Shown here: piece after piece, positions 12,466 to 58,348 of the stretch | Numbering within the stretch: the first letter of the stretch is position 1 | How the letters are laid out: each line of letters begins with the position of its first letter | IMG/VR virus record: IMGVR_UViG_3300036770_008729 | Coordinates: 186,001 to 250,000 of that record | Reading direction: 5' to 3' (one strand) | Length of the DNA: 64,000 bases | The notes under the pieces: model-generated | Seen by the model: the letters and a program-made list of their open reading frames with translations, nothing else | Databases searched by the model: none | What the model was told of the DNA's origin: nothing | Position numbers and translations under genes: made by a program

Positions 12466-13576
12466 ATTCAAGAAACTTGAAGAAAAAATCAATGGTCAAA
12501 ACTTTAACCAGGGATATAAGAATATTAATACTCTTATGTTCGTGCTTTCTATTTTTGGACATTTTGCTTCAATATTCTTAGCATATTTTGCACTATCTAA
12601 AGTCCTTTCAGGTGTAATTGAAAACAACCAAATAGTAGTTTTCATCACATCTGTAATTCTTCTTTCAGGTTTGGAGCTAATAAAAAGAGATATTTTTGAC
12701 AAATTCTCTATACAATATCTTAAAATCAAAGCTTTCACAAAAGATGTTCTACCACTTTTTATATTGAGTTGTGCTATTATAGCAACATCTTTTTATGCAT
12801 CTATTCACGGTGCACAAGAGTTCTCATCTAAAACCGATGTTATTGAAAAAGATAAAAAAGAAGTAATAACAAAGGTAAGCGATTCTTTGACTTCTGTTTA
12901 CAATGTAAAGATTGTAGATATAGAAAATGAAATCAAAGCTATAAAATCTAAAATAGAAACAAAAGATAAAGAACAAACAGAATTAGAAGCAATTCAACCA
13001 CCAACTCGTTCTGCTAAACAACGAATTAAAGATTTAAAAGATGAGAAAACCATATTAAGAACAGATATTACAAAGTTAGAATCTGATGAGGATAAGGTAA
13101 AAGATGAGTTAAGTGTGAAGATTAAGGAACAAGAGACAGAAATTACAACTGAAACTGAAAAGAAAAAAGAAGGCAATGATAGTAATTCTTTGGCATTTGT
13201 TTTAATTTCCACACTAATCGAACTTATCATTTTAGCTGGTGTTTATTTTAATGAATACTATAAATTTAGGTCTTATAGAGAGTTTAGACAGCAAATAGAA
13301 AAAGATCCTAACTATCAGAAGTGGATGCTTTACGATCAAATTTTAGACATCATCTACCCAGAAGATGCTAAGATGAACCAGAAATTACCATCAAATAAGG
13401 TGATTGCTGACATGTGTAAAGTAAATGAGATAATAGTTATGCCAAAAGATATAACAAACTTCTTGAAAGTCACTTCTAATTTAGGTATTATAAAAACATC
13501 TGGATCAACCAGATACATAAACAAGCAAAGAGATTTAGCTTTTGAGATTTTGAAAAAGCACTTTGGTATTCAATGA
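12446..13576 (+). CDS. Membrane protein, 3 TM plus long coiled coil plus TM
   Basis: Hydrophobic segments flanking a charged heptad region. Confidence 0.75.
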   Translation: MKMKINEFKKLEEKINGQNFNQGYKNINTLMFVLSIFGHFASIFLAYFALSKVLSGVIENNQIVVFITSVILLSGLELIKRDIFDKFSIQYLKIKAFTKDVLPLFILSCAIIATSFYASIHGAQEFSSKTDVIEKDKKEVITKVSDSLTSVYNVKIVDIENEIKAIKSKIETKDKEQTELEAIQPPTRSAKQRIKDLKDEKTILRTDITKLESDEDKVKDELSVKIKEQETEITTETEKKKEGNDSNSLAFVLISTLIELIILAGVYFNEYYKFRSYREFRQQIEKDPNYQKWMLYDQILDIIYPEDAKMNQKLPSNKVIADMCKVNEIIVMPKDITNFLKVTSNLGIIKTSGSTRYINKQRDLAFEILKKHFGIQ

Positions 13577-13794
13577 TAGGAGAAGTTCATAGATATTTAG
13601 GAGGTGATTCATTCTTAGATGGTCACTTGGAAGTTGGTAGCTTTTATACTATTGAATCTGTTGGTGAAGTTGATGGTAATGAATTTGTTACATTCAATGA
13701 GACAAAAAGAGCTAGCTACATACACACATTAGAAGCACATTTCAAAAACATTTCTAAAGAAAGAGATTTGAAGTTGACAACTTTATTAGATTAA
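13573..13794 (+). CDS. Small hypothetical protein with C-terminal tag (ERDLKLTTLLD)
   Basis: ORF track; tag motif. Confidence 0.7.
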   Translation: MIGEVHRYLGGDSFLDGHLEVGSFYTIESVGEVDGNEFVTFNETKRASYIHTLEAHFKNISKERDLKLTTLLD

Positions 13795-13804
13795 TATATA
13801 TTAA
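13791..13804. promoter_or_regulatory. TTAATATATATTAA palindromic late-type motif
   Basis: Same motif seen upstream of many genes. Confidence 0.4.
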
Positions 13805-13809
13805 TATTT

Positions 13810-14649
13810 ATGGTTGAAACTCCGTTTAACTACACTGGTTCGAAATATAAACTACTTAATCAGATACTTCCGGAATTTGATTATACTAAATCAAATTTTG
13901 TTGATTTATTTGCGGGAGGTGGTAGTGTTTATACAAATGTTGTCGATAAATATCAAAAAGTTTTAGTAAATGATATTATAGCAGATTTAATCGGAATACA
14001 CGAAAATATTGTTTCTGGTGATGAAATAATTCAAGATACTAAAAGTATATGTCCGGGTAAAAATAATGCACCAGGATTTGCAGAATTGAGAAATTCATAC
14101 AACACTAATCCAACATCGGCTAAACTTTGGGCATTAATGCTATCTTCAACAAATAATATGATGAGGTTCAATCAGAAATTCAAATATAATCAGACTTATG
14201 GCGAAAGAGGTTGGAATTCAAACACAGATACTAAAGTCGATACTTTCAAAAATCATATCAGACAATATAAAGACAGATTGAGGTTCATTTCAAAACCTTT
14301 TTATGAAGTTCCTATTAAATCAAATGTTATGTATTACATCGACCCACCCTATGGGAGAATAAAATCTGTAGATGGTAGCATTGGAAAAAAACAAATCTCA
14401 GAGGCTGGTTATAATGCTTTTTGGAAAGAAGATGATGATAAAAATCTATTCGATTATATCAAACAAATAGATCAAAATGGATCATCATTTATGGTTTCTG
14501 GAGTATTAGAACACGATGATAAGGTCTGTTGGATGTTAGATAAATTAATACAAGATGGTTTTAATGTTCAAGAGTTGAAATTCGATTACAATAAGGTTTC
14601 GAGAAAAGGTGATAAAATCACAAAAGAAGTTATAATAAAAAACTATTAA
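13810..14649 (+). CDS. dam: DNA adenine methyltransferase (D12/Dam-like)
   Basis: PFNYTGSK, DLFAGGGSV, DPPY motifs. Confidence 0.85.
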   Translation: MVETPFNYTGSKYKLLNQILPEFDYTKSNFVDLFAGGGSVYTNVVDKYQKVLVNDIIADLIGIHENIVSGDEIIQDTKSICPGKNNAPGFAELRNSYNTNPTSAKLWALMLSSTNNMMRFNQKFKYNQTYGERGWNSNTDTKVDTFKNHIRQYKDRLRFISKPFYEVPIKSNVMYYIDPPYGRIKSVDGSIGKKQISEAGYNAFWKEDDDKNLFDYIKQIDQNGSSFMVSGVLEHDDKVCWMLDKLIQDGFNVQELKFDYNKVSRKGDKITKEVIIKNY

Positions 14650-15296
14650 ACTATCACACTTCCTGTTCCTAAATAAACCCAATTCGTACCACTAAGACTA
14701 CCTCTCCAAACTCTACTTTGTTGTGATGCTGGTTGTGAGACATCTATTGCATTATAAGGTCCCGCATTTCCAACTGCATTAGATTTTACTCTAGTAACCA
14801 ACCATTGATACTCTTCATCTTTATAAAGTTCAATCAGATATGACTTCGGTGTTGTAGTTGCTTGATAGGTTCCCATAAAAACTACTAACTTTATACTCCA
14901 CCTACTAGGTGATAGAGATGTATCAATTTTATACCAAGCATCTTGTGCATCCCCATCACTCATAACAAGTCCAGGATTTAACCATTGGTCTGATGCATTA
15001 CCAACAAGCGGCTTGACATTAACATCTTGTGGATTACTAAGTATATTACCGAATCCCGATCCAACAGTTACATAACCATTTGTAGAAACAAATAGAGATG
15101 TAGAGGAAACCCCACCAGAAGAGAAGGCAAATGGCATAGTTATTGGAGTTACACTATATCCATCATCAATGGATGTGTAACTTGTTGATAATTTTGTATA
15201 GCTGGCACTACCTGTCCAGTTAAGTAAATTGATTGGGTCGTATCTATATGTTAATTTCTGTCGCGATGCAACTATTGAAAGTGATGATCTTATCAT
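14646..15296 (-). CDS. Hypothetical beta-rich protein, possibly virion or adhesion
   Basis: Ser/Thr/Gly-rich; MIRS N-terminus as in 40699..41547. Confidence 0.65.
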   Translation of the reverse strand: MIRSSLSIVASRQKLTYRYDPINLLNWTGSASYTKLSTSYTSIDDGYSVTPITMPFAFSSGGVSSTSLFVSTNGYVTVGSGFGNILSNPQDVNVKPLVGNASDQWLNPGLVMSDGDAQDAWYKIDTSLSPSRWSIKLVVFMGTYQATTTPKSYLIELYKDEEYQWLVTRVKSNAVGNAGPYNAIDVSQPASQQSRVWRGSLSGTNWVYLGTGSVIV

Positions 15297-15356
15297 AAAC
15301 TATATATTAAAGAAAAGAATATTATTTTAATATATATTTAAAAAAATAAGTATATT

Positions 15357-17076: not shown

Positions 17077-17802
17077 ATGAATGCTGTTTGTCTTTTATGT
17101 AGAAAACCAGATAGAATGTGGTGTGAATTTTTAGATAAATTTAACAATTACAAAGTTTTTATTATAGTTGATGACCAAGAAATTGACTTATCTGATATAA
17201 AAAGAGACTATTCAAATCTGACATTTATTCAAATATCTGATAACGATTGTATCGACAAATGCTACACAAAAATAAATTACTTTGTTAAAAAAGACATAAC
17301 ATCTTGGGAAAGATCTCTGTTATTCTTCACATTCATTGAAAAATCTTTTGACCAAGTTTGGTTTATAGAAGATGATGTATTTTTATATGATGAAAGTGTA
17401 TTAGAAAAAATCGATAAAAAATATCAAAAAGAAGATTTATTAACTAGATTCACACACTTTCCAGAAGAAAAACAAACTAAATGGGGTCCTATAGAAAATC
17501 TAAAAGAGCCAATAAGAAGCGCAATGTGTTGTGTGGTTAGAATGTCAAAAAGAATGCTTTTAGAGATCAATGAGTTTGTTAAAATTGAAAAAAGATTTTG
17601 TTTCTTAGAAATTCTTTTTCCAACACTAGCAACTAATTTAAATTTAGATTATAAAAATCCTGATGAATTTGATAGTGTAAGATTCGACCCAGATAAGTTA
17701 ATAAAGAAAAAAATGACAACCGAATTACTACAAAAAAATCTATTTCATCCGGTAAAAGATATCTATAAGCACAAAATTTATAGAGAAGGCATTCTACACT
17801 AA
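17077..17802 (+). CDS. Putative glycosyltransferase-like protein
   Basis: VFIIVDD and VWFIEDDV acidic motif typical of GT-A folds. Confidence 0.5.
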   Translation: MNAVCLLCRKPDRMWCEFLDKFNNYKVFIIVDDQEIDLSDIKRDYSNLTFIQISDNDCIDKCYTKINYFVKKDITSWERSLLFFTFIEKSFDQVWFIEDDVFLYDESVLEKIDKKYQKEDLLTRFTHFPEEKQTKWGPIENLKEPIRSAMCCVVRMSKRMLLEINEFVKIEKRFCFLEILFPTLATNLNLDYKNPDEFDSVRFDPDKLIKKKMTTELLQKNLFHPVKDIYKHKIYREGILH

Positions 17803-18372
17803 AACTTGATCTAATTTCACATCTCGAATTATGAACTTAAGCGACTCACTTGAATCAAGTAGCGATTGAAATATTTTATTTCTATTAAAAAATCCACTGA
17901 AAAGCTCGAGGTCAGAAGATTGTTTCTCAAAATTACTACAATATCGGATTGAGAGAAATAAATTAGGATGTAATCTTACTATCCATAACTCACCATAACC
18001 ATCGTTACAAGGTATAGTCAAAGAAAATGTTTGTTCAAACTCAGGTCCAAAATTATTTATTGAAGGCTCGAATCCTAATTTTAGGAATAGGTCTTTAACA
18101 TAATTATATCTATCGTATCTACCAATTAACTTAGTCTCTGTGTCATAGTGTGATAATCTACTAGGTAAGTCCGCAAAACCATCTATAGTTCCTATATGAT
18201 AGTATTCTTCTATGATTTCATCTATTTTAGACTCTCTTTCATTTTCTTTATTGGGTCTCAATTTTAAGTTGATGACATTTGACTCCGATTTATCAAAAAT
18301 GAAATAAGTAACATCTTCTTCAGATGCTAACTTTTCACACTCATCTATTAAATATTGAGGTATTTCTTTCAT
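17794..18372 (-). CDS. Hypothetical protein, tag motif internal (ERESKIDEII) and terminal (IRDVKLDQVL)
   Basis: ORF track. Confidence 0.75.
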   Translation of the reverse strand: MKEIPQYLIDECEKLASEEDVTYFIFDKSESNVINLKLRPNKENERESKIDEIIEEYYHIGTIDGFADLPSRLSHYDTETKLIGRYDRYNYVKDLFLKLGFEPSINNFGPEFEQTFSLTIPCNDGYGELWIVRLHPNLFLSIRYCSNFEKQSSDLELFSGFFNRNKIFQSLLDSSESLKFIIRDVKLDQVLV

Positions 18373-18852: not shown

Positions 18853-19284
18853 TCATTTTTTAATTATTTTATTAATTTTTATATCTCTGTTGTATGATGT
18901 GATAAAAGATTCAAAATCCTCTCTATCTGTGAATACCTTCTCTGTTAGTGAATTAATCTTACCTTTGAATATTCTTTTACAAGGATAGTATCCATTACCA
19001 TCTGAATTTTGACCAAATGGATTAGTCGAATCTGGCTCCTTCTGAAATCCTTTCCATATTTCAAATACCTTATTATCCATATCATAAAAATAAGCCCATT
19101 CACAAAATAGAGAATCATTGATAAAATCAATGCTATCTTTTATAACTGAAAATCCAGCCCAATCTCCATTTTTACAAGCTGTCCAAAATTCAACTCCTAA
19201 TCCACTTGGATAAGAATCAGATTGATTGTAATTCGCTTTGTATTCACCATCTTCTATAAATCCGTATAATCCTCTTGTACTCAT
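18853..19284 (-). CDS. Conserved-looking phage protein (MSTRG...SDSYPSGLG) with tag
   Basis: ORF track; NRDIKINKII end. Confidence 0.75.
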   Translation of the reverse strand: MSTRGLYGFIEDGEYKANYNQSDSYPSGLGVEFWTACKNGDWAGFSVIKDSIDFINDSLFCEWAYFYDMDNKVFEIWKGFQKEPDSTNPFGQNSDGNGYYPCKRIFKGKINSLTEKVFTDREDFESFITSYNRDIKINKIIKK

Positions 19285-19499
19285 ATTCCTAATTTATCTA
19301 ATTTTCTATCTCTAACTTTATCTATATTACTTATCCAAAATTCATCACCACAGAATTGTTGTGATGGGTATGTGATTTTTACTGGTTGGTCAAGATTTAC
19401 GCCGGATTTGTGTAATCCACACTCCCACCCACCATATTGGTGTTTTCTATCACTATCGAAGTAGTGACAATTAATACATTTTTTACTTGAATAACTCAT
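19281..19499 (-). CDS. Small Cys-rich protein with tag
   Basis: CINCHYF; VRDRKLDKLGI. Confidence 0.7.
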   Translation of the reverse strand: MSYSSKKCINCHYFDSDRKHQYGGWECGLHKSGVNLDQPVKITYPSQQFCGDEFWISNIDKVRDRKLDKLGI

Positions 19500-19515: not shown

Positions 19516-19854
19516 TCATAATCCTAAATCACTCAATTTATTTTCTCTTTCAATTGCCACTTTATTTACCATTTTACAAACTTCTTCATGTCCATTTACC
19601 GCATCATCCCAAGAAGTATATCTTAACATATAACCATCATATTCGCCACCAAAAACCAATGTTTCAAAAAGTATAGGCACACCTTCATCCTTACCATGTT
19701 CCCATCCTAAAAAGACGGTTGAGACTTCTACTTCACCAAAAGATGTTCTATCAACAACTCTTGAAGTTTCACTTTGATACTTTAACCACAATGTGGTATC
19801 GTTACAAGCAACAGGTTTTTTATCTATTAGTATGTAATAACAATCAGTTATCAT
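19516..19854 (-). CDS. Hypothetical phage protein with tag
   Basis: VSTVFLG..H...PILFETLVFGG motif; ERENKLSDLGL. Confidence 0.75.
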   Translation of the reverse strand: MITDCYYILIDKKPVACNDTTLWLKYQSETSRVVDRTSFGEVEVSTVFLGWEHGKDEGVPILFETLVFGGEYDGYMLRYTSWDDAVNGHEEVCKMVNKVAIERENKLSDLGL

Positions 19855-26916: not shown

Positions 26917-27120
26917 CTATTTGTTATAATTGTCTAAAAAGTTCTTTTCGTGTTGTGATAAAGATTCAATACCACTTTGATTAATCTTTTCTAAAATCTT
27001 ATTTAACTTGTTTTCTCTGAATGATCTTCTGTCATTAAACTCATCATCAGTCAAAGGCCTCTGGTGTTTGACTTCAATTTCTTTCTTACCAAACCTTCTA
27101 AGCCAATCTAAAAATTTCAT
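26917..27120 (-). CDS. Small protein with DUF6576-like C-terminus
   Basis: [28 protein letters not shown]. Confidence 0.6.
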
Positions 27121-28037
27121 AACTCTTTGTTTTTCTTAGCAAACTCAGCAGCTGCCTCTCTTACCCAAGCACCATCCTCGTGAGCTTTTACTCTCATTTT
27201 AAGTCTATCTCTATTCATTGGACCATTTCCACTTACTACCTTATCAAATTCATCCCAATCTGGTTCAGTGAAATTCCAATTTCCAGTTGATTCATCAAAC
27301 TTTAAGTTTTCATCTGGTATAGTTAATCCTAAATAATCAGCCTGTGGTTTAGTTTGATTTACAAACTTTTGTCTTAACTGATCATTCGTTTCTCTTTTGA
27401 TTCTCCACTTAATCGCGTTCTCTGAATTATGAGACCTACTATCCGGTGGTCCAAACATCATTAAAGTTGGATACCACCATCTGTTTAAGGCATCTTGTGC
27501 CATTTCTTTTTGTTCAGATGACCCGAATGATAACTTGGTCATAATTTCATAACCCTGCCTTTGATGAAAACTTTCTTCTTTACATATCCTAACCATTGCT
27601 CTAGCATAAGGACCATAAGAAGCTCTCTGTAACATTACTTGATTCATTATAGCAGCACCATCAACTAACCAACCGATAGCTCCCATATCAGCCCAAGTCA
27701 AAGTAGGATAGTTAAATATAGAAGAATATTTTGCTTTTCCACAATGTAAAGCATCTAATAATTCCTCTCTTGAAACTCCTAATGTTTCTGCAGCTGTATA
27801 GAGGTAAAGACCGTGACCACCTTCGTCTTGAACTTTTGCTAAGAGTATTAGTTTGGCTCTAAGTGAAGGAGCTCTTGTAATCCAATTTGCTTCAGGTAAT
27901 TGACCAATAATTTCAGAGTGAGCGTGTTGAGAAATCTGACGAATAAGATGCTTTCTGTAATCCTCCGGCATCCAGTCTTTAGGTTCGATGTATTGATTTT
28001 GTTCTAATTTAGAATCAAATTTTGGTTGATGTTCCAT
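27117..28037 (-). CDS. paaA: 1,2-phenylacetyl-CoA epoxidase catalytic subunit A (di-iron, ferritin-like)
   Basis: [44 protein letters not shown]. Confidence 0.92.
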
Positions 28038-28224
28038 TATCAGTATCTATTTTTTTATTATACTCCCATGGACAATGTCTGCAATAATTCTTACAACATC
28101 TAACTCTAATCATTTGTAAATACTCTTTTGTCCAAACTCTAAGTTTAACACCATCAACTTCTTCCCAATAGAAATCAACACCTTCAATAAGGTCTTCTAT
28201 GTGAAATCGTTTGTTTTCGCACAT
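28015..28224 (-). CDS. DUF5522-like Cys-rich protein
   Basis: EYL...[12 protein letters not shown]. Confidence 0.6.
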
Positions 28225-28227
28225 AAA

Positions 28228-28908
28228 TTATTTACTTTTTCTAAAAGATTCGAAGTTTTTAACCCATTTTTTAGATTCTGTTGTAGACATTGATTTAACT
28301 ATACCTTCAAGCTCTAACAAAGTCTTTTTATAATCAGTGTGTAAGATTGCAGTTCCACCAGCCGATGTAAACTTCTCAACATATTTAGGTCTATCATCAA
28401 TTAATATGTCTGTTTTACCTTCAGCAGCTTTACCTTTATCAACTGTTATAATTACTTGGTCAACCATTCCTTCAAAATGTTCTTTTACCCAATCTTTCTT
28501 TTCAATAACAGATGGATTATTCAAATCATTTTCATCACCAACAGGCGCTGATAATATATTAGGTAATTTGCCAGTCAATTCCGCAGCCTTAGCAACCATT
28601 TCTTTTGCACCAGGCATTAGTGGTAAGTTTCTATAGAAACCAGGTTTTGCAGCTATACTAAAGACTTTAGAAGTATATTTATTGAAAGACTTTTTAAGCT
28701 CTTTAACTGGACTATTTGGATCTTTTTCTAATTCTGCCTTGAATTTAGTTTTGATATCATCATCAACTAATCCTTTGTAGTCTTGAAACTTGGTTTCAAT
28801 TAGATTGTCTAAATCGGCTCTTAGTTGTATTATCTCTGGATTTTTTTTAAGACCACCATCCATATCGGCTAAAACGCCATCTAAGTCAAAAAATATTCTT
28901 GTTTCCAT
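28228..28908 (-). CDS. HAD-family 5'(3')-nucleotidase (NT5C-like)
   Basis: FFDLDGVLAD and ILIDDRPKY motifs. Confidence 0.85.
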   Translation of the reverse strand: METRIFFDLDGVLADMDGGLKKNPEIIQLRADLDNLIETKFQDYKGLVDDDIKTKFKAELEKDPNSPVKELKKSFNKYTSKVFSIAAKPGFYRNLPLMPGAKEMVAKAAELTGKLPNILSAPVGDENDLNNPSVIEKKDWVKEHFEGMVDQVIITVDKGKAAEGKTDILIDDRPKYVEKFTSAGGTAILHTDYKKTLLELEGIVKSMSTTESKKWVKNFESFRKSK

Positions 28909-29408
28909 TATTTAAAATCTTCTTTTTTAATATCACCAATTGAGCCAAATGAATCAGCAAATCCAGGTGTTTTTTTATTCTCCACATTATTTGCAATAGT
29001 TATATGAAAATATCTTTCTGACTCAGGATTAGTTAAACCAAGTTGTTCATAGATTGAATCTACAAAAGATTTTATCTCTTCTTGATTTTGAACCGCAACT
29101 ACAAAACTTTTCTTTCCTTTTTCTGGTCTTTCCGCAAAGGTTGTTTGGCCTAATACAATTTTAGGCATTTCCATTTTTGGAAGTCCTTCTTTAAGTTTAT
29201 CTTTATTTTGTTTACAGTTAGCTATAGAAGTTAAGGTTATATGCAACTTATCTTCAGCTAAAGGAAAATAAGACTTAGCTTCTTCATTTCCCTCATAAAT
29301 ATTTTTAATTTCGGATTTAGTTGTGTTATCTAACTTTAGAAGAAGAGCCGCCTCAAAAACTATACAATTATCACCTGTAAAATCTTCATATAATTTTAAA
29401 TATTTCAT
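28908..29408 (-). CDS. 2H phosphoesterase with CTS-like N-terminus
   Basis: Two HxT motifs (LHITL, FHITI); MKYLKLYEDF. Confidence 0.75.
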   Translation of the reverse strand: MKYLKLYEDFTGDNCIVFEAALLLKLDNTTKSEIKNIYEGNEEAKSYFPLAEDKLHITLTSIANCKQNKDKLKEGLPKMEMPKIVLGQTTFAERPEKGKKSFVVAVQNQEEIKSFVDSIYEQLGLTNPESERYFHITIANNVENKKTPGFADSFGSIGDIKKEDFK

Positions 29409-29443
29409 AATATAAATTGTTTTTTGTATATATTAAAAAAACA

Positions 29444-30046
29444 CTACAATTTTATAAAATCTAATTCTTTAAGTGAAAACGTAATAAACATTATAGAAAA
29501 CAATATTCCAATCAAATTAAAAGAAACTAAATAAAAGACTAAAAGCAAAACACTAAATAAAAGAGAAATCCATGCACTTATTGTAATTGATTTTTGTCTA
29601 TCTCCTGTTTTTAATACTAAAATACTTCTCAATATACGACCACCATCTAAAGGAAAGATTGGAATTAAATTGAATATAAAAAGAAATAGATTGACTAAAT
29701 ACATGCTGTAAAAAAACTGACAAGGAAAAAATGCGTAGGCAAATAGTGATAGTGATATTAAGACTAAATTGACCCAAGGTCCAGCACCAACTATTAGTAT
29801 CATATCTCTTTCTCTGATAGAATCTATATTCATATTGGCTTGACCAGCGAATAATCCAACTTCTATACCAGTGACACTATATCCTTTTTTTTGAGCCACC
29901 CAAGCGTGACCAATTTCATGGAGTAGAATTGAAATAAAGATTGAGACTACAAAGACTGGTGATAGCCAAAAGAAAAGCAGTAAAAACCATAAGCTAAGAT
30001 TAACAGGAACACCCCTGAAGTTGAAAATTTTGATTTGTGTTTTCAT
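29444..30046 (-). CDS. Site-2 protease, M50 family
   Basis: HEIGH, GAGPWVN, FNLIPIFPLDGG. Confidence 0.9.
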   Translation of the reverse strand: MKTQIKIFNFRGVPVNLSLWFLLLFFWLSPVFVVSIFISILLHEIGHAWVAQKKGYSVTGIEVGLFAGQANMNIDSIRERDMILIVGAGPWVNLVLISLSLFAYAFFPCQFFYSMYLVNLFLFIFNLIPIFPLDGGRILRSILVLKTGDRQKSITISAWISLLFSVLLLVFYLVSFNLIGILFSIMFITFSLKELDFIKL

Positions 30047-39166: not shown

Positions 39167-39304
39167 ATAGATATAAAGTTCTTAAGAATGAGATTAGAAC
39201 AATTAATTCATATTGAAGAATATGAAACTTGTGCAAGAATCCATAAATGGATTGAAGAATTAAAAAAACACCATGATACAATTAAAAACAATCAGAGAAA
39301 TTGA
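39119..39304 (+). CDS. Small protein with UvrB/UvrC-like motif
   Basis: LEQLIHIEEYETCARIHKWI. Confidence 0.55.
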   Translation: MIYIIMKSSIKTKKEHIDIKFLRMRLEQLIHIEEYETCARIHKWIEELKKHHDTIKNNQRN

Positions 39305-39536
39305 TGATAAAACCAACGAAGGTAAATTACTGATAGCTGCTCTCGCCATACTTACATCTCTGCAACAAGAAGACATTAAAAATAATATTTGGGGAGGATC
39401 GGTCAATCCAGACCAAGGTTTATCTCAATTGAAAGATTTAGCAAACAAAATCTATTTTGAAAAAGAATGGAAAGCAGAAGAAAAATCCAAAGAAAGGAAT
39501 AGAAAAATAGAACAAGTAATAAATGATAGACTTTAA
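39273..39536 (+). CDS. Hypothetical protein with tag (ERNRKIEQVI)
   Basis: ORF track. Confidence 0.7.
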   Translation: MIQLKTIREIDDKTNEGKLLIAALAILTSLQQEDIKNNIWGGSVNPDQGLSQLKDLANKIYFEKEWKAEEKSKERNRKIEQVINDRL

Positions 39537-39735
39537 TGAACTCAAATTCAAAGATTATAAAACCGTTACATTTAGAGGAATTGATATAGATGTATCTGCT
39601 GAATTATTACAAGATATAAATGCGGGAACTCAACCACTATCATTACTTGAAAGAATAATAACTCAAGAATACAATAGGTTACTGCCAGTTATAAGAAATA
39701 AAAAAATTGACTCTATATTAGATGCGACTAATTGA
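39523..39735 (+). CDS. Hypothetical protein with tag (IRNKKIDSIL)
   Basis: ORF track. Confidence 0.7.
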   Translation: MIDFNELKFKDYKTVTFRGIDIDVSAELLQDINAGTQPLSLLERIITQEYNRLLPVIRNKKIDSILDATN

Positions 39736-40054
39736 TAAGATAGAATCCACGGAATTTCAATTCTTACTTTTTGTATTTGAGCACTATAAAAAATCAAAGA
39801 AAAAATACATTAAGATAACATCGGATAGAGATTTCAAATTATCATCTCTTCTTCAAAAATCGGATGACTATAATCTAATTGTTACTAAATACAATAATCT
39901 AATAAATCTAATCAACTCATTAAAAATAGACAATTTGGATATACCAACACTTAACATTGTTGGAAATACAATTGATGAGTTTGATAAGTTAATCTATGAG
40001 ATATGTTACAAACACAAGATTCTAATTGAAGATCCTGATGATTTGCCTTTTTAG
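39722..40054 (+). CDS. Hypothetical protein ending DDLPF
   Basis: ORF track; SSB-like acidic tail. Confidence 0.6.
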   Translation: MRLIDKIESTEFQFLLFVFEHYKKSKKKYIKITSDRDFKLSSLLQKSDDYNLIVTKYNNLINLINSLKIDNLDIPTLNIVGNTIDEFDKLIYEICYKHKILIEDPDDLPF

Positions 40055-40077: not shown

Positions 40078-40335
40078 GTGGAAAATTATCAAGATAAATT
40101 GACATCAAAGAAATGGAATATAAATGCTGAAATGGGTTTCATTGAGGTGGGTATAAACTTTTTTATCGGTCTTAAAATACTCAGTATAACTACACATGAC
40201 ATTCAAATTGATTTCATTTTATTACATTTAGAAACAGAAGAAGGAAAGTTTATTATAGATAGTAAAGATTGGCAAGAAATACAATCAATTCTTAGAACAA
40301 TAAAAATTGAAGAACTATTGAATAAAAAATCATAA
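40078..40335 (+). CDS. Hypothetical protein with tag (LRTIKIEELL)
   Basis: ORF track. Confidence 0.65.
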   Translation: MENYQDKLTSKKWNINAEMGFIEVGINFFIGLKILSITTHDIQIDFILLHLETEEGKFIIDSKDWQEIQSILRTIKIEELLNKKS

Positions 40336-41642: not shown

Positions 41643-41855
41643 ATGAAATCAATTAGAAGACAATTCAGTATTGAATATTTAGGACATAACTACCCTAAAC
41701 TTACCATTGAAATAACTCACTTAAAACTCAGGAAAAAATATCAATTAATAATTGATAACCCTACCATACTCGATAACATAGATAATATTATAAACGACTA
41801 TCTTTACCAAATACAAAAAGACATAAGAGAAGATTTGATAAATAACTTTATATGA
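41643..41855 (+). CDS. Hypothetical protein with tag (IREDLINNFI)
   Basis: ORF track. Confidence 0.6.
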   Translation: MKSIRRQFSIEYLGHNYPKLTIEITHLKLRKKYQLIIDNPTILDNIDNIINDYLYQIQKDIREDLINNFI

Positions 41856-42085
41856 AAATCTTCAACATTAATACACAAGAAGGACCAATCTCTGTTAGTG
41901 TTAAGTTCTTCCAAGATTTAACCGAATACGAAATTATGGATTTAGGTGATACCATTTTCATTAAAGACCTTAGAAAAAACCCAATTTCTAAAAGATTTAT
42001 GTTTAGTATGGCAACAACAGAATGGAAAGAAGTTCAAATGGAAATTAGAGATAATAAAATAGAAGACTTGTTAAATGGACATTAG
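41852..42085 (+). CDS. Hypothetical protein with tag (IRDNKIEDLL)
   Basis: ORF track. Confidence 0.7.
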   Translation: MKIFNINTQEGPISVSVKFFQDLTEYEIMDLGDTIFIKDLRKNPISKRFMFSMATTEWKEVQMEIRDNKIEDLLNGH

Positions 42086-42332
42086 AAAATATTCACTCTA
42101 CTATTTCGATAAATGTAAAAACAACTTACCACACGGTGCAGAACTTGTTTCTATCTCACTAAACGGAAGACCTTATAATAACCAAATACCTCAATTCGGA
42201 GATATCGTGACACTTTACTATAAATATGGAAAAACTAAACTAAATCAATCTAAAAGAGCTCACTTCGAATACATTTGGGGTCAACTACAACAGGAAGATA
42301 GAAACAGAAAAATAGACCAACTATTTGACTAA
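42075..42332 (+). CDS. Hypothetical protein with tag (DRNRKIDQLF)
   Basis: ORF track. Confidence 0.7.
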   Translation: MDIRKYSLYYFDKCKNNLPHGAELVSISLNGRPYNNQIPQFGDIVTLYYKYGKTKLNQSKRAHFEYIWGQLQQEDRNRKIDQLFD

Positions 42333-44596: not shown

Positions 44597-45265
44597 ATGC
44601 CATACCATAACATATCAAAAATATCAAAACAACTACTAGATTACTCTTTCTGGCACCTACCAGAAAACTCTAGAAATAAACTATTCACAAACATCAAAAG
44701 AATAGACCTAAAAGAACTATACGCAACCATATACCTCAACCTCTACGATAGGGAAATAATAACTGAACAAACCGAACCACATATATCCACCATAATCCCC
44801 TTAATAAGAGAGTGGAAAGAAACTAAAAACCTAATAGAAGAACAAGAAAGAAAAAAACTAACCTATCAAATAAACTCATCATTCCTTAAACTACAAAATA
44901 AATACCTCATTCACCAAGTCCTGAAAAACCTTTATACCACCCTAACCAAAGACACCAACATCATATACATCGATACAGATGTTATTTACCTAAATAACAC
45001 CACCAACGACATAGTAACAAAACTAAATGGAGTATACGGAAACTACCCCTCTGAACTTAATATAACAGACTTAGACTACCTATACATAATAAGACATAAA
45101 CTGGTAGCAGAACAAGGAAAAGGAATAACAAAAACAAATCTAGATAGACTAAGTATACACAGACAAAATAATACAGTAAAGTCTAAGATAATCTCAGATA
45201 ATAATGACCTAAAAACAACCTTTAATATACTTATAAGAGAAGATAAACTAAATAAAATCCTCTAA
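44597..45265 (+). CDS. Miniature family-B DNA polymerase palm-like protein with tag
   Basis: DLKELYATI (motif A-like), KLTYQINSSF (motif B-like), YIDTD (motif C); ends IREDKLNKIL. Confidence 0.5.
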   Translation: MPYHNISKISKQLLDYSFWHLPENSRNKLFTNIKRIDLKELYATIYLNLYDREIITEQTEPHISTIIPLIREWKETKNLIEEQERKKLTYQINSSFLKLQNKYLIHQVLKNLYTTLTKDTNIIYIDTDVIYLNNTTNDIVTKLNGVYGNYPSELNITDLDYLYIIRHKLVAEQGKGITKTNLDRLSIHRQNNTVKSKIISDNNDLKTTFNILIREDKLNKIL

Positions 45266-45267
45266 CA

Positions 45268-45591
45268 ATGACATCCCAAGAAATCAAACTCTACGGCAGA
45301 CAAATAGTAGAATCAATCACCAAAAGCGATATACCATACACCGATATCAATAAATGTAAAGAATTTCATATCGATTTCTCATTTCCAAGCTGGTCAATAG
45401 GCAAAGGCACAAACCCTAATCATAATATACTCGGACACTCACATATAATACTAACCTGGAACGCAATGCCTCATAAAAAATCCAGCATAATATGGACTAA
45501 CCTAAAACAAATAAAAACAACTGAATTAAACTCAATTATAGAAGCAATTAAAAGAGATATAAAATTAAATACAATACTAATCCATAACTAA
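45268..45591 (+). CDS. Hypothetical protein with tag (KRDIKLNTIL)
   Basis: ORF track. Confidence 0.65.
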   Translation: MTSQEIKLYGRQIVESITKSDIPYTDINKCKEFHIDFSFPSWSIGKGTNPNHNILGHSHIILTWNAMPHKKSSIIWTNLKQIKTTELNSIIEAIKRDIKLNTILIHN

Positions 45592-51331: not shown

Positions 51332-51673
51332 ATGAAAATATCCAACAACCAACTAAAAAACAACCCAGAATTCTATCAATTCCTATGCAGAGTATGCGAA
51401 GAAACCACCGGCGATGTATTATACAATACACACACAGAAATCGACCACATAACAAATGAAGAAGATTACAAAGATAAAACTAAAGCCTTCAGTATAAAAT
51501 ATAGATTAGTCTATCTACCTATGAAGAATGACAGTAACGCAGAACAAATTGAATATTCTATATCTAAATCTCATATAATAGATAACCTCAATTGGACCTG
51601 GATATACAATATGATAGAAAAAGAAGTTAAAATGATACTAAGAGATAATAAACTAAATGAATTAGGAATATGA
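51332..51673 (+). CDS. Hypothetical protein with tag (LRDNKLNELGI)
   Basis: ORF track. Confidence 0.7.
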   Translation: MKISNNQLKNNPEFYQFLCRVCEETTGDVLYNTHTEIDHITNEEDYKDKTKAFSIKYRLVYLPMKNDSNAEQIEYSISKSHIIDNLNWTWIYNMIEKEVKMILRDNKLNELGI

Positions 51674-51900
51674 ATTGGCAAAGCTTTAAATGCTCAATAT
51701 CACTACATAATTGGGAACATAGTAAAGAAGATATTGAATGGGAAAGTTCTATTGGTAAAAAAATAACCATATCAACAAGTATTAGAATATGCCAAAATTG
51801 CCATAAAAAACAAAGATATTCCGTTCAAGGTTGGGTAGATTGGAATAAATTATCAAAAGAACAATTGAGAGATAAAAAGATTAAACAATTAGGAATATGA
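51670..51900 (+). CDS. Cys/His small protein with tag (LRDKKIKQLGI)
   Basis: C...H.W...CQNC. Confidence 0.7.
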   Translation: MNWQSFKCSISLHNWEHSKEDIEWESSIGKKITISTSIRICQNCHKKQRYSVQGWVDWNKLSKEQLRDKKIKQLGI

Positions 51901-52145
51901 AAGTAGTTTGTATAGATAATGAATTAAAAAGGTCAAGTGAGCTAGTAAAACCAATTAAACTAACAAATCTTACAATTGGTAAGGTATATGAATCACCAAT
52001 TGTAGGACTACCTGGTATGTGGTCTATCATTGGTAGGGTCGCCATAACATGTGATGATGGTATTGTAAGAGATTATTCGACTACTAGATTTATTGCATTA
52101 GAAGAGTGGAGAGAAATACAATTAAATAAAATAGGATTACAATGA
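51897..52145 (+). CDS. Hypothetical protein with tag (WREIQLNKIG)
   Basis: MKVVCIDN..LTIGKVYE pattern. Confidence 0.7.
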   Translation: MKVVCIDNELKRSSELVKPIKLTNLTIGKVYESPIVGLPGMWSIIGRVAITCDDGIVRDYSTTRFIALEEWREIQLNKIGLQ

Positions 52146-52462
52146 AACTTAGTGATTGGGAAGAAAAACTAGTCGAAGATATCGATATCATTTTTAGTGG
52201 TGGTTATAGTGAAAACTTTAACGAAGAACAGATTGAAGAAGTAAAACAACTTTCTTTTCTTCTGAATCATATTGAGTTGAAATATAATTCAGTAGTCTTT
52301 TCTTATGATGCTTTTAACCTTATAGTTAGCGGGATAGAAGAATTACCAAGTGAATGGGCTAAAGAACATATCATACAATGCATTAAAAATTCTGATGAAT
52401 TTAAGGGAGCTTACAAATTATTTGTTCGTGATTTTACAATTGATAAGATTATTAAAAAATGA
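52142..52462 (+). CDS. Hypothetical protein with tag (VRDFTIDKII)
   Basis: ORF track. Confidence 0.7.
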   Translation: MKLSDWEEKLVEDIDIIFSGGYSENFNEEQIEEVKQLSFLLNHIELKYNSVVFSYDAFNLIVSGIEELPSEWAKEHIIQCIKNSDEFKGAYKLFVRDFTIDKIIKK

Positions 52463-52731
52463 GGAATAAAATGACTTACTGGATAGAAATTAATATAGAT
52501 GAAATCTACTTATATGGAAAAAAAACTCCACTATTAAAAGACCAACAACTCGAAGTCCAAATGATAAACGGAGAAGCTAAAATAATAATAGACGGAATAC
52601 CACACAAAAACCTCCTCCTATTCAAAGATAAAACTTATACCATATCATCACTAATCGGAATGAATTATATCTCCGACATAACTGGACAAATCGAAAGAAA
52701 TAACAAACTAAATAAATTAGGAATAGAATGA
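52459..52731 (+). CDS. Hypothetical protein with tag (ERNNKLNKLGI)
   Basis: ORF track. Confidence 0.7.
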   Translation: MRNKMTYWIEINIDEIYLYGKKTPLLKDQQLEVQMINGEAKIIIDGIPHKNLLLFKDKTYTISSLIGMNYISDITGQIERNNKLNKLGIE

Positions 52732-52919
52732 CCAATAATACCTCAATAGTCGATATCAATCCAAATAGATGTCAAATCATAGAAATTATCAATCAACAAG
52801 ATGATTGGATAGTAGCTATAGTTAAAGCCAGACTAATAGGTGGCAAACGATGGAAAAAGAGAAAAGTACTCCTAAGTAAATCTGAATTCAGACAAATACA
52901 ATTAGGTAAATTAGTATGA
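52728..52919 (+). CDS. Hypothetical protein with tag (FRQIQLGKLV)
   Basis: ORF track. Confidence 0.6.
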   Translation: MTNNTSIVDINPNRCQIIEIINQQDDWIVAIVKARLIGGKRWKKRKVLLSKSEFRQIQLGKLV

Positions 52920-55572: not shown

Positions 55573-55591
55573 AATTTGTTTATCATTCTAA

Positions 55592-56275: not shown

Positions 56276-56295
56276 CTTCATATTTTTATTATTTT

Positions 56296-57606: not shown

Positions 57607-57697
57607 GCTATTATATTTCCTTTTTTATTTATAGTATATATTATAAATTGAGGAGATATTTTTAATAATCAGTTCAACGGTGTATTGGACTCTTTTG

Positions 57698-57810
57698 TAG
57701 TCAGGACAGGAATCGAACCTGCATGTGGGCCTTGTGTGTATTTCAACTATACTGCGGGTTTATCCACTCCGTTTAACTATTCGGTGCGTTTACCATTTCG
57801 CTACCTGACT
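57698..57810 (-). ncRNA. tRNA-scaffold RNA A (113 nt)
   Basis: AGTCAGG/CCTGACT acceptor, GCG/CGC D-stem, GCAGG-TTCGATT-CCTGT T-arm, no canonical anticodon arm. Confidence 0.75.
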
Positions 57811-57812
57811 AT

Positions 57813-57893
57813 TTGAGGATGAGAAGCCCTCTGTGTTGGTAGTAACTCAACTATCTACATTTACTCATCTCCTTTCTCAAGGGAACAACACAA
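57813..57893 (-). ncRNA. Structured RNA, kissing-loop type, copy 1
   Basis: Conserved ends shared with 58888-58981. Confidence 0.55.
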
Positions 57894-57976
57894 AAAATTA
57901 GAGTTGTTTCGGGAGCTTCACCCGCCTTCGAATATACTTGTATCTCTCAGTTAAGAGTCAATACGAGCTTTTTACT

Positions 57977-58348
57977 TTACAACTCAAATAGTATATTATT
58001 TAATTTCATTTCTCTTATTTTTTCATTTAAGTAAGGTCTTTTAGAAAGCATTGACCATACTGGTCCATAATTGTTAATTAGTGGTTTTGTATGGATTGTG
58101 ATATCAGATATATTTAATGTGTAGTCCATTTTTACATAGCCATATCTTTTATCTGCTTTTGCAACACCGGTAGATTCTACTCTGATAAATTCATCAGATA
58201 TGTTAATAATGTTATATTCCCACATATCACCAGCTTCTTCATATCCAGAGTCGTTAGGTATAAACAACCTAAATTGGACTATTGGATCATAAACAAATCC
58301 TAGACTGGCAAATATATCAATCAGGTCTTTAAGTATTTTATTTTTCAT
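57977..58348 (-). CDS. Hypothetical protein with tag (IREMKLNNIL)
   Basis: ORF track. Confidence 0.7.
   Translation of the reverse strand: MKNKILKDLIDIFASLGFVYDPIVQFRLFIPNDSGYEEAGDMWEYNIINISDEFIRVESTGVAKADKRYGYVKMDYTLNISDITIHTKPLINNYGPVWSMLSKRPYLNEKIREMKLNNILFEL

What the first reader, a model, noticed from the sequence alone, without database searches (positions are those of the whole stretch)
13573..58348. Shared C-terminal tag R[DEN]x[KQ][IL]xx[IL][LG] on about 25 otherwise unrelated proteins
Seen: ERDLKLTTLL, IRDVKLDQVL, NRDIKINKII, VRDRKLDKLGI, ERENKLSDLGL, ERNRKIEQVI, IRNKKIDSIL, IRDNKIEDLL, DRNRKIDQLF, IREDKLNKIL, KRDIKLNTIL, LRDNKLNELGI, LRDKKIKQLGI, WREIQLNKIG, VRDFTIDKII, ERNNKLNKLGI, IREMKLNNIL and more. 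They sit in coupled operons (17.8-19.9, 39.3-40.3, 41.6-42.3, 51.3-52.9 kb) and never occur on CTS-tagged proteins. Inference: a second addressing system, such as a docking helix, degron or localisation signal read by one hub protein. I know of no described function.
Basis: partly seen in the sequence, partly recalled or inferred. Interest (0 to 1): 0.75.

Follow-up and report, generated by a model that had tools for sequence, protein, structure and literature searches.

The report
Shared C-terminal tag on phage proteins
About one in ten proteins of this huge bacteriophage, otherwise unrelated to each other, end in the same ten-residue helix; it looks like an undescribed address label read by one still unidentified partner, perhaps the phage's own protein-degrading machine.

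Summary
The window has 19 ORFs ending in Phi-R-[DEN]-x-K-[IL]-x-x-[ILV]-[LIG], followed by 0-7 residues. The 281-kb record holding the window has 40-44 such ORFs, about 10% of its genes. The related 634-kb Mahaphage LR745206 has about 128 (13.5%). Shuffles predict 1-4 per genome, and binomial P is 1e-32 to 1e-108. Selection acts on the amino acids: codon use at the conserved positions equals the genome background. All 16 comparable orthologue pairs keep the tail although the proteins are only about 45% identical. The protein bodies share no detectable similarity and match no Pfam family. AlphaFold2 places the tail as a low-confidence terminal helix after a flexible linker. Its conserved residues lie on one face of that helix. 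LR756504 carries a variant with K at +1. The 735-kb relative LR756501 has no such tail but carries about 109 copies of a different motif, DPYGEExW. No Pfam, PDB or literature match was found. The best reading is a modular docking or recognition peptide for one common receptor. My specific guess, at low confidence, is the phage's ClpC-like/ClpP protease or its Bcs1-like AAA ATPase, which ends in IGF. The receptor was not identified: the single complex prediction gave no answer.

The parts
13573..13794 (+). tagged ORF, 73 aa; tail ...KERDLKLTTLLD (tail 13762-13791)
   Evidence: tail-HMM 11.5 bits, 0 aa from the end; its start overlaps the stop of the membrane protein gene 12446-13576
17794..18372 (-). 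tagged ORF, 192 aa; tail ...IIRDVKLDQVLV (17797-17826); second, internal copy RESKIDEI at residue 46
   Evidence: the orthologue in LR745206 also has the tail
18853..19284 (-). tagged ORF, 143 aa; tail ...YNRDIKINKIIKK (18856-18888)
   Evidence: 16.8 bits
19281..19499 (-). tagged ORF, 72 aa; tail ...KVRDRKLDKLGI (19284-19313); its stop overlaps the next start (ATGA)
19516..19854 (-). tagged ORF, 112 aa; tail ...IERENKLSDLGL (19519-19548)
39273..39536 (+). tagged ORF, 87 aa; tail ...KERNRKIEQVINDRL (39495-39533)
39523..39735 (+). tagged ORF, 70 aa; tail ...VIRNKKIDSILDATN (39694-39732)
   Evidence: the orthologue in LR745206 has the tail
40078..40335 (+). weaker tagged ORF, 85 aa; tail ...ILRTIKIEELLNKKS (T at +1)
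   Evidence: (6.0 bits)
41852..42085 (+). tagged ORF, 77 aa; tail ...EIRDNKIEDLLNGH (42047-42082)
   Evidence: 16.8 bits; used as the partner chain
42075..42332 (+). tagged ORF, 85 aa; tail ...EDRNRKIDQLFD (42300-42329)
44597..45265 (+). tagged ORF, 222 aa; tail ...LIREDKLNKIL (45236-45262)
45268..45591 (+). tagged ORF, 107 aa; tail ...IKRDIKLNTILIHN (45553-45588); followed by a gene on the other strand
51332..51673 (+). tagged ORF, 113 aa; tail ...ILRDNKLNELGI; first of six consecutive tagged genes joined by ATGA overlaps
51670..51900 (+). tagged ORF, 76 aa; tail ...QLRDKKIKQLGI
51897..52145 (+). tagged ORF, 82 aa, small SH3-like body; tail ...EWREIQLNKIGLQ
52142..52462 (+). tagged ORF, 106 aa; tail ...FVRDFTIDKIIKK (T at +3)
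   Evidence: 12.1 bits
52459..52731 (+). tagged ORF, 90 aa; tail ...IERNNKLNKLGIE
   Evidence: 17.0 bits
52728..52919 (+). diverged tagged ORF, 63 aa; tail ...SEFRQIQLGKLV
57977..58348 (-). tagged ORF, 123 aa; tail ...KIREMKLNNILFEL (57980-58015)
26917..27120 (-). 67-aa ORF with the motif ([10 protein letters not shown]) at residue 35, 24 aa from the end; atypical position
   Evidence: 13.0 bits
11029..12111 (+). candidate reader only, not shown to bind: Bcs1-like classical AAA ATPase, 360 aa, ending in a conserved ...[DE]-I-G-F

Best explanation
The tail is a modular C-terminal short linear motif. It forms a helix of about 2.5 turns, Phi-R-[DEN]-x-K-[IL]-x-x-[ILV]-[LIG], on a flexible linker. 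It is attached to 10-13% of the proteins of a clade of huge Bacteroidota phages of the Mahaphage type. Most tagged proteins are 60-230-aa ORFans in tightly packed operons.

Several points are shown. The tail is selected at the amino-acid level. It is retained while the protein bodies diverge. Its conserved residues (R0, Phi+4, Phi+7, Phi+8, flanked by K+3 and D+1) fall on one face of an alpha-helix, and the variable polar residues fall on the other face.

The following is inferred. The conserved face docks into a groove of one common receptor, so the tail acts as an address label.

My specific commitment is inferred too, at about 0.25 on its own. I propose that the receptor is the phage's own AAA+ proteolytic machinery. 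One candidate is the N-domain-less ClpC-like unfoldase, which carries a VGF ClpP-docking loop and would work with phage ClpP. The other is the Bcs1-like AAA ATPase at 11029-12111, whose family ends in IGF. Under this model the tail is either a degron that limits the lifetime of many small, probably early, proteins, or a tether that turns them into adaptors for that protease. Engagement by an unfoldase would explain why the tag sits at a chain end.

The confidence below refers to the general statement of a protein-level address tag read by a common receptor.
For: Position and excess. The tail occurs 43, 128 and 47 times at C-termini in the three genomes, against 1-4 in shuffles. Binomial P is 1e-32, 2e-108 and 9e-38.

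Amino-acid-level selection. The Arg codons are AGA 116, AGG 20 and CGN 22, against 125.7, 15.1 and 17.3 expected from background use. K, I and L behave likewise.

Retention. The tail is kept in homologues of a 143-aa protein at 60-99% identity. In the BLAST table 18 of 19 G000/LR745206 orthologue pairs are tagged in both, and all 16 pairs whose tails could be aligned keep the pattern at a mean overall identity of 45%.

Modularity. The bodies are unrelated and lack families.

Structure. In the AF2 model the body is confident, residues 110-143 have pLDDT 46-56, and the tail forms helix 130-142.

Receptor-like co-variation. LR756504 uses R-K-x-[KR]-I-x-x-L-L. LR756501 has none, but carries DPYGEExW 109 times.

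Clp link. The Hsp100 homologue lacks Clp_N, has a UVR-type M-domain, and has a GVGFSTK loop in D2 in G000, LR745206, LR756504 and the IMG/VR relative G004. The LR756501 orthologue lacks that loop. High-scoring ClpP genes are present in LR745206 (2), LR756504 (3) and the IMG/VR relatives G001, G004, G006, G009 and G010. LR756501 has none. G004 and G009 also carry tails.

AAA link. The fold is Bcs1/YjoB-like, and a C-terminal IGF is conserved across 23 aligned relatives and the three Mahaphage orthologues compared.
Against: No binding has been shown. The one complex prediction tested a tagged protein against YeaH, a J-protein and the DnaK substrate-binding domain. It scored 0.00, which the tool itself calls no answer. 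ClpC, ClpP and the AAA ATPase were not tested.

The ClpP/VGF correlation rests on a single contrast, LR756501 against the rest, and so is confounded with phylogeny. Twenty-four other proteins show the same presence/absence pattern. They include PrkA-YeaH-SpoVR, GrpE and a J-protein.

No ClpP is found in the 281-kb record itself, although that record is probably a fragment. Weaker ClpP-like genes exist in the 595-kb phage LR756511 and in Ralstonia phage RsoM2USA, whose 40-kb samples show no tails. The 0-7 variable residues after the motif argue against ssrA-type recognition of the free carboxylate. The receptor could equally be a host protein.
Confidence: 0.55

Rival explanations
1. The tail is a virion-packaging signal. 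It would bind the procapsid interior (major capsid or scaffolding protein). Many small proteins would then be loaded into the giant head and delivered with the DNA. This resembles the T4 capsid-targeting sequence on internal proteins or the C-terminal cargo-loading peptides of encapsulins.
For: The logic matches T4 internal proteins, which are unrelated polymorphic small proteins sharing only a short terminal tag (my knowledge of the literature: Mullaney and Black 1996; Comeau and Krisch 2005). Encapsulin cargo peptides and the coat-binding helix of the P22 scaffold are C-terminal, and the latter depends on basic residues (own knowledge). A charged coiled-coil protein of 295 aa (G000 124017-124904), which looks scaffold-like, tracks with the tail-bearing genomes.
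Against: Tagged genes are scattered over the whole genome on both strands, in small-gene operons. They are not in the recognisable structural module. A load of 40-130 different cargo proteins would be unprecedented. No capsid protein, prohead protease or conserved cleavage site next to the tag was found.
Confidence: 0.13
2. The tail is a tether to a non-proteolytic hub. Candidates are the phage chaperone network (DnaK, DnaJ, GrpE, an extra J-protein), the PrkA-YeaH-SpoVR module, a membrane receptor such as the coiled-coil membrane protein at 12446-13576, or a host hub such as RNA polymerase, the ribosome or the sliding clamp. The result would be localisation or recruitment, not degradation.
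For: Two tagged genes lie between grpE and dnaJ in one operon (G000 75819-78205). GrpE, the J-protein at window 1897-2571, the PrkA trio and the membrane protein are all present in the three tail-bearing genomes and absent from LR756501. The membrane protein gene is translationally coupled to the tagged ORF at 13573. The +1/+4/+7/+8 spacing equals that of a PIP box.
Against: The test with YeaH, the J-protein and the DnaK substrate-binding domain gave no signal, though that is uninformative. DnaK, DnaJ and the AAA ATPase also occur in the tail-less LR756501. The tail lacks the contiguous hydrophobic core of DnaK clients. No clamp gene was detected. The Q and the aromatic pair of PIP boxes, and the QLxLF motif that binds the beta clamp, are absent.
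Confidence: 0.2
3. The tail is an intrinsic structural or physical element with no common receptor. It might be a helix-capping unit, a weak self-association helix, or a membrane-binding amphipathic helix.
For: The tail is amphipathic. The [IL]-x-x-[IL]-G-[IL] variants fit a Schellman C-cap (own knowledge). The predicted helix is not packed on the body.
Against: Arg is present at position 0 in every tail counted, and Lys at +3 is near-invariant. The acidic or amide residue at +1 is also specific. Membrane or self-association helices are usually conserved in character, not in sequence. Arg sits in the middle of the hydrophobic face. Whole lineages switch to a variant motif or to a completely different one, which is what receptor-ligand co-evolution predicts.
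Confidence: 0.08
4. The conservation is at the nucleotide level. The sequence would be an A-rich translational-coupling or reinitiation signal, a promoter, or a recombination site at gene ends. The peptide would then be a by-product.
For: Tagged genes overlap the next gene more often than untagged ones (45-53% against 21-28%). Tails ending in L-G-[IL] encode TTAGGAATATGA, which contains the next start codon. Gly at +8 is mildly enriched among overlapping genes (21/31 against 63/137, P=0.046).
Against: Codon use at the conserved positions equals the genome background, including the CGN/AGR and TTR/CTN/ATH alternatives. Between 19% and 26% of tagged genes are followed by a gene on the other strand, and more are followed by gaps. 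Shuffling the same 17 residues destroys the signal, giving 1.6-3.3 against 43-128. AT-rich controls lack the motif.
Confidence: 0.03

Closest known systems
Capsid-targeting sequence (CTS) of phage T4 internal proteins
   Same: A short terminal peptide shared by otherwise unrelated, fast-evolving small phage proteins. It is read by one phage structure and acts as a transferable address tag.
   Different: The T4 tag is N-terminal and has a different sequence. It is cut off by the prohead protease and is carried by only a handful of proteins. Here the tag is C-terminal, no cleavage site was seen, 40-130 proteins per genome carry it, and no link to the head module was found.
C-terminal degrons and adaptor tethers of Clp proteases (ssrA tag, MuA C-terminus, SspB XB peptide, MecA-ClpC)
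   Same: A short C-terminal peptide appended to unrelated proteins and read by a AAA+ unfoldase. The tail-bearing phages encode a ClpC-type unfoldase with a ClpP-docking loop, and ClpP was found in every near-complete one examined.
   Different: There is no sequence likeness. The motif is helical and tolerates 0-7 extra residues, so the free carboxylate is not part of it. The phage ClpC-like protein lacks the N-domain used by known adaptors. No binding or degradation has been shown.
MIM1 helix of ESCRT-III proteins binding the MIT domain of the Vps4 AAA ATPase
   Same: A C-terminal amphipathic helix with a basic residue next to leucines spaced i, i+3 (K-Phi-x-x-Phi against R-L-x-x-L). It is carried by several proteins and read by the N-domain of a classical-clade AAA ATPase. 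A classical-clade AAA ATPase is encoded at 11029-12111.
   Different: The full MIM1 consensus (D/E)xxLxxRLxxL(K/R) is not matched. The N-domain of the phage AAA ATPase is alpha/beta and Bcs1-like, not a three-helix MIT bundle.
PIP box and other sliding-clamp-binding motifs
   Same: A terminal short linear motif that lets many different proteins bind one hub. The spacing of [DEN]+1, Phi+4, Phi+7 and Phi+8 equals Q-x-x-Psi-x-x-aromatic-aromatic.
   Different: The tail has no conserved Q and no aromatic pair. The conserved R0 and K+3 are not PIP features. No clamp gene was detected in these phages.
Encapsulin cargo-loading peptides and the coat-binding C-terminal helix of the P22 scaffolding protein
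   Same: C-terminal peptides that dock unrelated cargo, or the scaffold, to the inside of an HK97-fold shell. Basic residues are critical in P22.
   Different: The consensus sequences differ. No shell partner was identified, and the tagged genes are not in a head module.

Membership tests
ssrA-type C-terminal degron (ClpXP/ClpAP) | The last residues are non-polar (LAA-COOH) and are recognised together with the free alpha-carboxylate, at a fixed distance from the end | tested here: not met
   Between 0 and 7 (rarely 9-10) variable, mostly polar residues follow the motif. The commonest spacing is 1.
ssrA-type C-terminal degron (ClpXP/ClpAP) | The tagged protein is degraded by a Clp protease in a tag-dependent way | not testable with these tools
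   There is only circumstantial co-occurrence with phage ClpC-like (VGF loop) and ClpP genes.
PIP box / clamp-binding motif | Consensus Q-x-x-[ILM]-x-x-[FY]-[FY] (or QL[SD]LF for the beta clamp) | tested here: not met
   Only the spacing of the hydrophobic residues matches. Position +1 is D/E/N (Q in 1 of 158). Positions +7 and +8 are I/L/V and L/G/I, with F rare.
PIP box / clamp-binding motif | A sliding clamp partner is present | tested here: inconclusive
   PF09116 and PF02768 give no match over their cut-offs in G000, LR745206 or LR756504. A divergent clamp or the host clamp cannot be excluded.
T4-type capsid-targeting sequence | An N-terminal tag followed by a prohead-protease cleavage site, on proteins found in the head | tested here: not met
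   The tag is C-terminal: 1-2 hits fall in N-terminal windows against 43-128 in C-terminal windows. No conserved cleavage motif lies next to it. T4-type gp23 and gp21 families were not detected. Presence in the virion is not testable here.
MIM1 (MIT-interacting motif) | Consensus (D/E)xxLxxRLxxL(K/R), and a MIT three-helix bundle on the partner AAA ATPase | tested here: not met
   Only K-Phi-x-x-Phi overlaps the consensus. The N-domain of the AAA ATPase is predicted alpha/beta with Bcs1/YjoB as best matches.
Any curated protein family or solved peptide complex | A match of the tail region to a Pfam model or a PDB chain | tested here: not met
   Twenty tail segments scanned against Pfam at E<=10 gave three unrelated single hits. 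A tail profile searched against PDB sequences gave only chance hits at E>=0.47.
   PF18962 matches only G000 66288-66515 and 14003-14218, both outside the window and on giant secreted proteins. The tail is a 10-residue helix on proteins without signal peptides.

The most novel reading that the evidence does not exclude
Huge phages of this clade run a proteome-wide, phage-encoded protein addressing system. A tenth or more of their proteins carry a short transferable tag, which is read by a dedicated phage machine such as an unfoldase-protease, a compartment or the capsid. The tag-reader pair is swapped between lineages: R-D-x-K-I-x-x-I-L in one, R-K-x-K-I-x-x-L-L in another, and DPYGEExW in a third. 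This would be a viral analogue of cellular sorting or degradation codes, and it is not described for any phage.
Probability: 0.4. Interest if true: 0.9.

Novelty: new variant of a known kind. Interest (0 to 1): 0.8.

Why it matters
Terminal address tags are known in cells, and one is known in T4, but none is known to mark 10-13% of a viral proteome. If one receptor reads this tail, a single experiment would assign a shared fate to more than a hundred ORFans per genome in the largest known phages, whose biology is almost entirely unknown. That fate could be timed destruction, recruitment, packaging or localisation. The lineage-specific tag variants offer a natural handle for finding the receptor by co-variation. 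A 10-residue portable tag with a dedicated reader would also be a useful tool in Bacteroidota.

Tried and rejected
1. Chance or composition is rejected by whole-protein shuffles, local shuffles of the last 17 residues, reversed and N-terminal windows, and AT-rich control genomes.

2. A DNA- or RNA-level signal is rejected by codon usage and by downstream context. Only the Gly at +8 shows a weak link to overlapping starts.

3. Hidden paralogy is rejected for most tagged proteins. Pfam and PHROG searches found nothing. One modelled body has no fold match.

4. The 376-aa neighbour at 12446-13576 is not a beta-clamp. It is a four-TM coiled-coil membrane protein.

5. Searches for T4-type clamp, capsid protein and prohead protease gave no matches.

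6. The complex prediction of a tagged 77-aa protein with YeaH, the J-protein and the DnaK substrate-binding domain scored 0.00, which is no answer. The cap then prevented a test of ClpC, ClpP or the AAA ATPase.

7. Promoter k-mer enrichment upstream of tagged operons found nothing.

8. Literature searches found no description of either motif.

9. Subtractive genomics left 24 candidate proteins, too many to name a hub.

10. A search of IMG/VR with one tagged protein and a tblastn search of the phage collection with another found almost nothing. The bodies evolve too fast.

Full report
WHAT THE WINDOW IS. The window is bases 186,001-250,000 of a 281,114-bp IMG/VR virus record with 30% GC. Over most of its length the record is syntenic with the 634,780-bp Mahaphage LR745206 from the survey of huge phages. 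Proteins identical to those of the window lie on a 598,435-bp metagenomic contig, so the record is probably a fragment. The genome encodes giant proteins with T9SS sorting domains, which points to a Bacteroidota host. It also encodes DnaK, DnaJ, GrpE, a further J-protein, a ClpC-like Hsp100, PrkA/YeaG-YeaH-SpoVR, gp32 and topoisomerase II.

CHECK OF THE OBSERVATION. A regular expression for the reported motif finds 17 window ORFs with the motif no more than 5 residues from the end. A broader expression, a tail HMM and direct reading raise the count to 19 of about 102 genes. The run includes six consecutive genes at 51332-52919.

In the whole record, 43 of 62 strict hits lie within 8 residues of the C-terminus, where 8% would be expected (P = 1e-32). 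The N-terminal 17 residues hold 2 hits, and the C-terminal residues read in reverse hold none. Whole-protein shuffles give a mean of 1.0. Shuffles of only the last 17 residues give a mean of 1.6.

PROTEIN OR NUCLEIC ACID. At the conserved positions of 158 tails from two genomes, codon use equals the genome background. For Arg the counts are AGA 116, AGG 20 and CGN 22, against 125.7, 15.1 and 17.3 expected. Lys, Ile and Leu use all their codon families as the background does. Tagged genes overlap the next gene more often than untagged ones (45-53% against 21-28%). However, 19-26% are followed by a gene on the other strand, and others are followed by gaps. Only the Gly of the L-G-[IL] endings, which encode TTAGGAATATGA, shows a weak link to overlapping starts (P = 0.046). 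Selection therefore acts on the peptide.

ANATOMY. The consensus from the tails of three genomes is:
- weak K at -4, S or Q at -3, E at -2
- Phi (I/L/Y/F/W/V) at -1
- R at 0, in every tail counted
- D > E, N at +1
- any residue at +2
- K at +3 (137 of 158; otherwise Q or R)
- I or L at +4
- N/D/K/E at +5
- K/Q/S/E at +6
- I/L/V at +7
- L > G, I, F at +8
- then 0-7 residues, most often 1

On an alpha-helix, R0, +4, +7 and +8 fall within one 100-degree sector, flanked by K+3 and D+1. The variable polar positions +2, +5 and +6 face the other way. This is my inference from helix geometry. AlphaFold2 on a 143-aa tagged protein with 13 homologues gives a confident body. Residues 110-143 have pLDDT 46-56, and the tail forms helix 130-142. 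The picture is an exposed one-sided docking helix on a flexible linker.

THE CARRIERS. With the tail removed, the 44 carriers of the record give no BLASTP hit to each other at E<0.01. Eighteen window carriers and ten larger carriers from relatives have no Pfam family and almost no PHROG family. The modelled body has no significant fold match. The carriers are 46-731 aa long with a median near 105. Most show no obvious signal peptide or membrane span by eye (o65606 is the clear exception). They lie in longer gene runs than untagged genes, 4.4 against 2.0 genes per unit.

CONSERVATION AND SPREAD. Homologues of one carrier at 60-99% identity keep Y-R-E-N-K-[IL]-N-[KQ]-[IL]-[IL]. A related 108.9-kb contig has nine tagged ORFs within 20 kb. 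LR745206 has 128 tagged genes of 949 (13.5%; P = 2e-108). In the BLAST table, 18 of 19 G000/LR745206 orthologue pairs with a tagged G000 member are tagged in both genomes. All 16 pairs whose tails could be aligned keep the pattern, at a mean overall identity of 45%.

LR756504 (636 kb, 26% GC) has a variant with K at +1, K or R at +3, almost always I at +4, and L-L at the very end. By the regex this gives 47-59 tails. The looser pattern R...Phi..Phi occurs in 159 C-terminal windows against 14.9 expected. The IMG/VR relatives G001, G004 and G009 carry tails too.

LR756501 (735 kb, 32% GC) has none: 1 of 1022 genes, P = 0.17. Instead it carries a different and very sharp motif, [LIV]-D-P-Y-G-E-E-x-W. 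It occurs 109 times: 41 at C-termini, about 20 near N-termini, and the rest internal. T4 (first 50 kb), LR756511 and Ralstonia phage RsoM2USA (40 kb each) show nothing. The tag is thus lineage-specific, it varies between lineages, and in one lineage it is replaced by another tag.

IS IT KNOWN. Twenty tail segments scanned against Pfam at E<=10 gave nothing recurrent. A tail profile searched against all PDB sequences gave only chance hits. Five literature searches gave no description of either motif.

Subtractive genomics looked for proteins present in G000, LR745206 and LR756504 but absent from the tail-less LR756501. It leaves 24 proteins. They include PrkA-YeaH-SpoVR, GrpE, the J-protein at 1897-2571, the membrane coiled-coil protein at 12446-13576, a 564-aa protein with a leucine-rich-repeat-like end at 31665-33359, a 295-aa coiled-coil protein, and several nucleotide kinases and 2H phosphoesterases. 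Two tagged genes lie between grpE and dnaJ. The one complex prediction allowed combined YeaH, the J-protein, the DnaK substrate-binding domain and a 77-aa tagged protein. It scored 0.00, which the tool defines as no answer.

Three further observations point to proteolysis.

1. The phage Hsp100 has no Clp_N domain. It has a UVR-type middle domain and a G-V-G-F-S-T-K loop in D2, the position and sequence type of the ClpP-docking loop of ClpC and ClpA. The loop is present in G000, LR745206, LR756504 and G004, and absent from the LR756501 orthologue.

2. High-scoring ClpP genes are present in LR745206 (2), LR756504 (3), G001, G004, G006, G009 and G010. LR756501 has none. The 281-kb fragment itself has none.

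3. It models as an alpha/beta N-domain plus a classical AAA module. Its best structural matches are Bcs1 and B. subtilis YjoB, followed by proteasomal Rpt subunits, p97 and Vps4. The 23 aligned members of its family of 724 relatives, and the three Mahaphage orthologues compared, end in [DE]-I-G-[FILV], and IGF is the ClpX-type ClpP-docking tripeptide. Its N-terminal 100-135 residues do not align between lineages that carry different tags.

All three are correlations that rest on one phylogenetic contrast, and none shows binding.

MOST LIKELY MECHANISM. It is shown that the tail is a modular, amino-acid-selected, exposed C-terminal helix with one conserved face, carried by unrelated proteins and varying by lineage. 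I infer that it docks to one common receptor (confidence about 0.55). My specific proposal, at about 0.25, is that the receptor is the phage Clp-type machinery. That would be the ClpC-like unfoldase with ClpP, or the IGF-ended AAA ATPase. The tail would then be a degron that limits the lifetime of many small proteins, or a tether that makes them adaptors. A need to be engaged by an unfoldase would explain the strict placement at a chain end, which a mere docking helix does not require.

The rivals are a packaging signal (0.13), a tether to a chaperone, PrkA, membrane or host hub (0.20), an intrinsic helix (0.08), and a nucleotide-level signal (0.03).

COMPARISON WITH KNOWN SYSTEMS. In logic the tail is closest to the T4 capsid-targeting sequence and to Clp degrons and adaptor tethers. 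In shape it is closest to the MIM1 helix read by Vps4. In spacing it is closest to a PIP box. It meets the defining sequence features of none of these (see the membership table). It is therefore not a member of any described family, although it may work like one of them.

VERDICT. The interpretation as an address tag is supported in general, but the hub and the outcome remain unknown. I rate it a new variant of a known kind of system (terminal targeting peptides). There is a substantial chance that it marks a new phage-encoded addressing system. Interest is 0.8.

Noticed in passing
LR756501.1 (loci L081-L117), e.g. 552409-556034 and 499642-503452: The 735-kb relative lacks the R..K[IL]..[IL]L tail. 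It carries a different sharp motif, [LIV]-D-P-Y-G-E-E-x-W, 109 times: 41 at C-termini, about 20 within the first 30 residues, and the rest internal, with up to 4 copies in one protein. The motif is absent from G000, LR745206 and LR756504, and I found no literature on it.
   Followed up: partly
window 11029-12111 (+): The AAA ATPase family has 724 relatives. The 23 aligned members and three Mahaphage orthologues end in [DE]-I-G-[FILV] at or near the C-terminus, which resembles the ClpX IGF ClpP-docking tripeptide. The AF2 model is Bcs1/YjoB-like. Some relatives are fused to MGS-like and AICARFT/IMPCHase (PurH) domains and reach 556-567 aa.
   Followed up: partly
G000 27826-29994 (L002:7826-9994), 82408-84273, 75819-78205; window 1897-2571: The phage encodes a full chaperone set. 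It has DnaK, DnaJ and GrpE, an extra J-domain protein (HPD motif), and a ClpC-like Hsp100. The Hsp100 has no N-domain but has a VGF ClpP-docking loop. Two tagged genes sit between grpE and dnaJ. ClpP genes are present in the complete relatives but not in this 281-kb record.
   Followed up: partly
G000 88500-93200 (L005:8500-13200): A PrkA/YeaG-YeaH-SpoVR trio is unusually conserved: 86%, 76% and 73% identity to LR745206. It is present in the three tail-bearing genomes and absent from LR756501.
   Followed up: partly
window 12446-13576 (+): This 376-aa protein has four predicted membrane spans, a long central coiled coil and a C-terminal domain of about 100 aa. It has 1188 metagenomic homologues. 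In LR756504 it lies next to the ClpC-like gene. Its stop overlaps the start of the first tagged ORF.
   Followed up: partly
G000 7250-14227, 66270-70769, 117360-120977, 122602-124020: These are giant secreted proteins (2325, 1499 and 1205 aa) and a 472-aa protein. They have signal peptides and T9SS-type C-terminal sorting domains. Phage-encoded T9SS cargo implies a Bacteroidota host.
   Followed up: partly
window 30107-31576 (-) and 36766-38391 (+): One protein has a tyrosinase central domain (PF00264, E=3e-26). Another is a group 1 glycosyltransferase. Both are unusual auxiliary genes for a phage.
   Followed up: no
window 17794-18372 (-), residue 46; window 39722-40054 (+), residue 36; window 26917-27120 (-), residue 35: These are internal copies of the tail motif. 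They may be relics of fusions between a tagged gene and its downstream neighbour after loss of a stop codon.
   Followed up: no
G000 58927-59487 (L003:18927-19487) and 147332-148081: These 2H phosphoesterase proteins give Acb1-like (anti-CBASS) and 'Swiss Army Knife' 2H matches. They are possible counter-defence genes.
   Followed up: no
whole record G000: IMG/VR classes the 281-kb record as a provirus and CheckV rates it 94% complete. Yet identical proteins lie on a 598,435-bp contig, and synteny covers only part of LR745206. The record is probably a fragment of a genome of about 600 kb.
   Followed up: partly
window 31665-33359 (+): This 564-aa protein of unknown function looks by eye as if it ends in leucine-rich repeats. 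It is one of the 24 proteins that track with the tail-bearing genomes.
   Followed up: no
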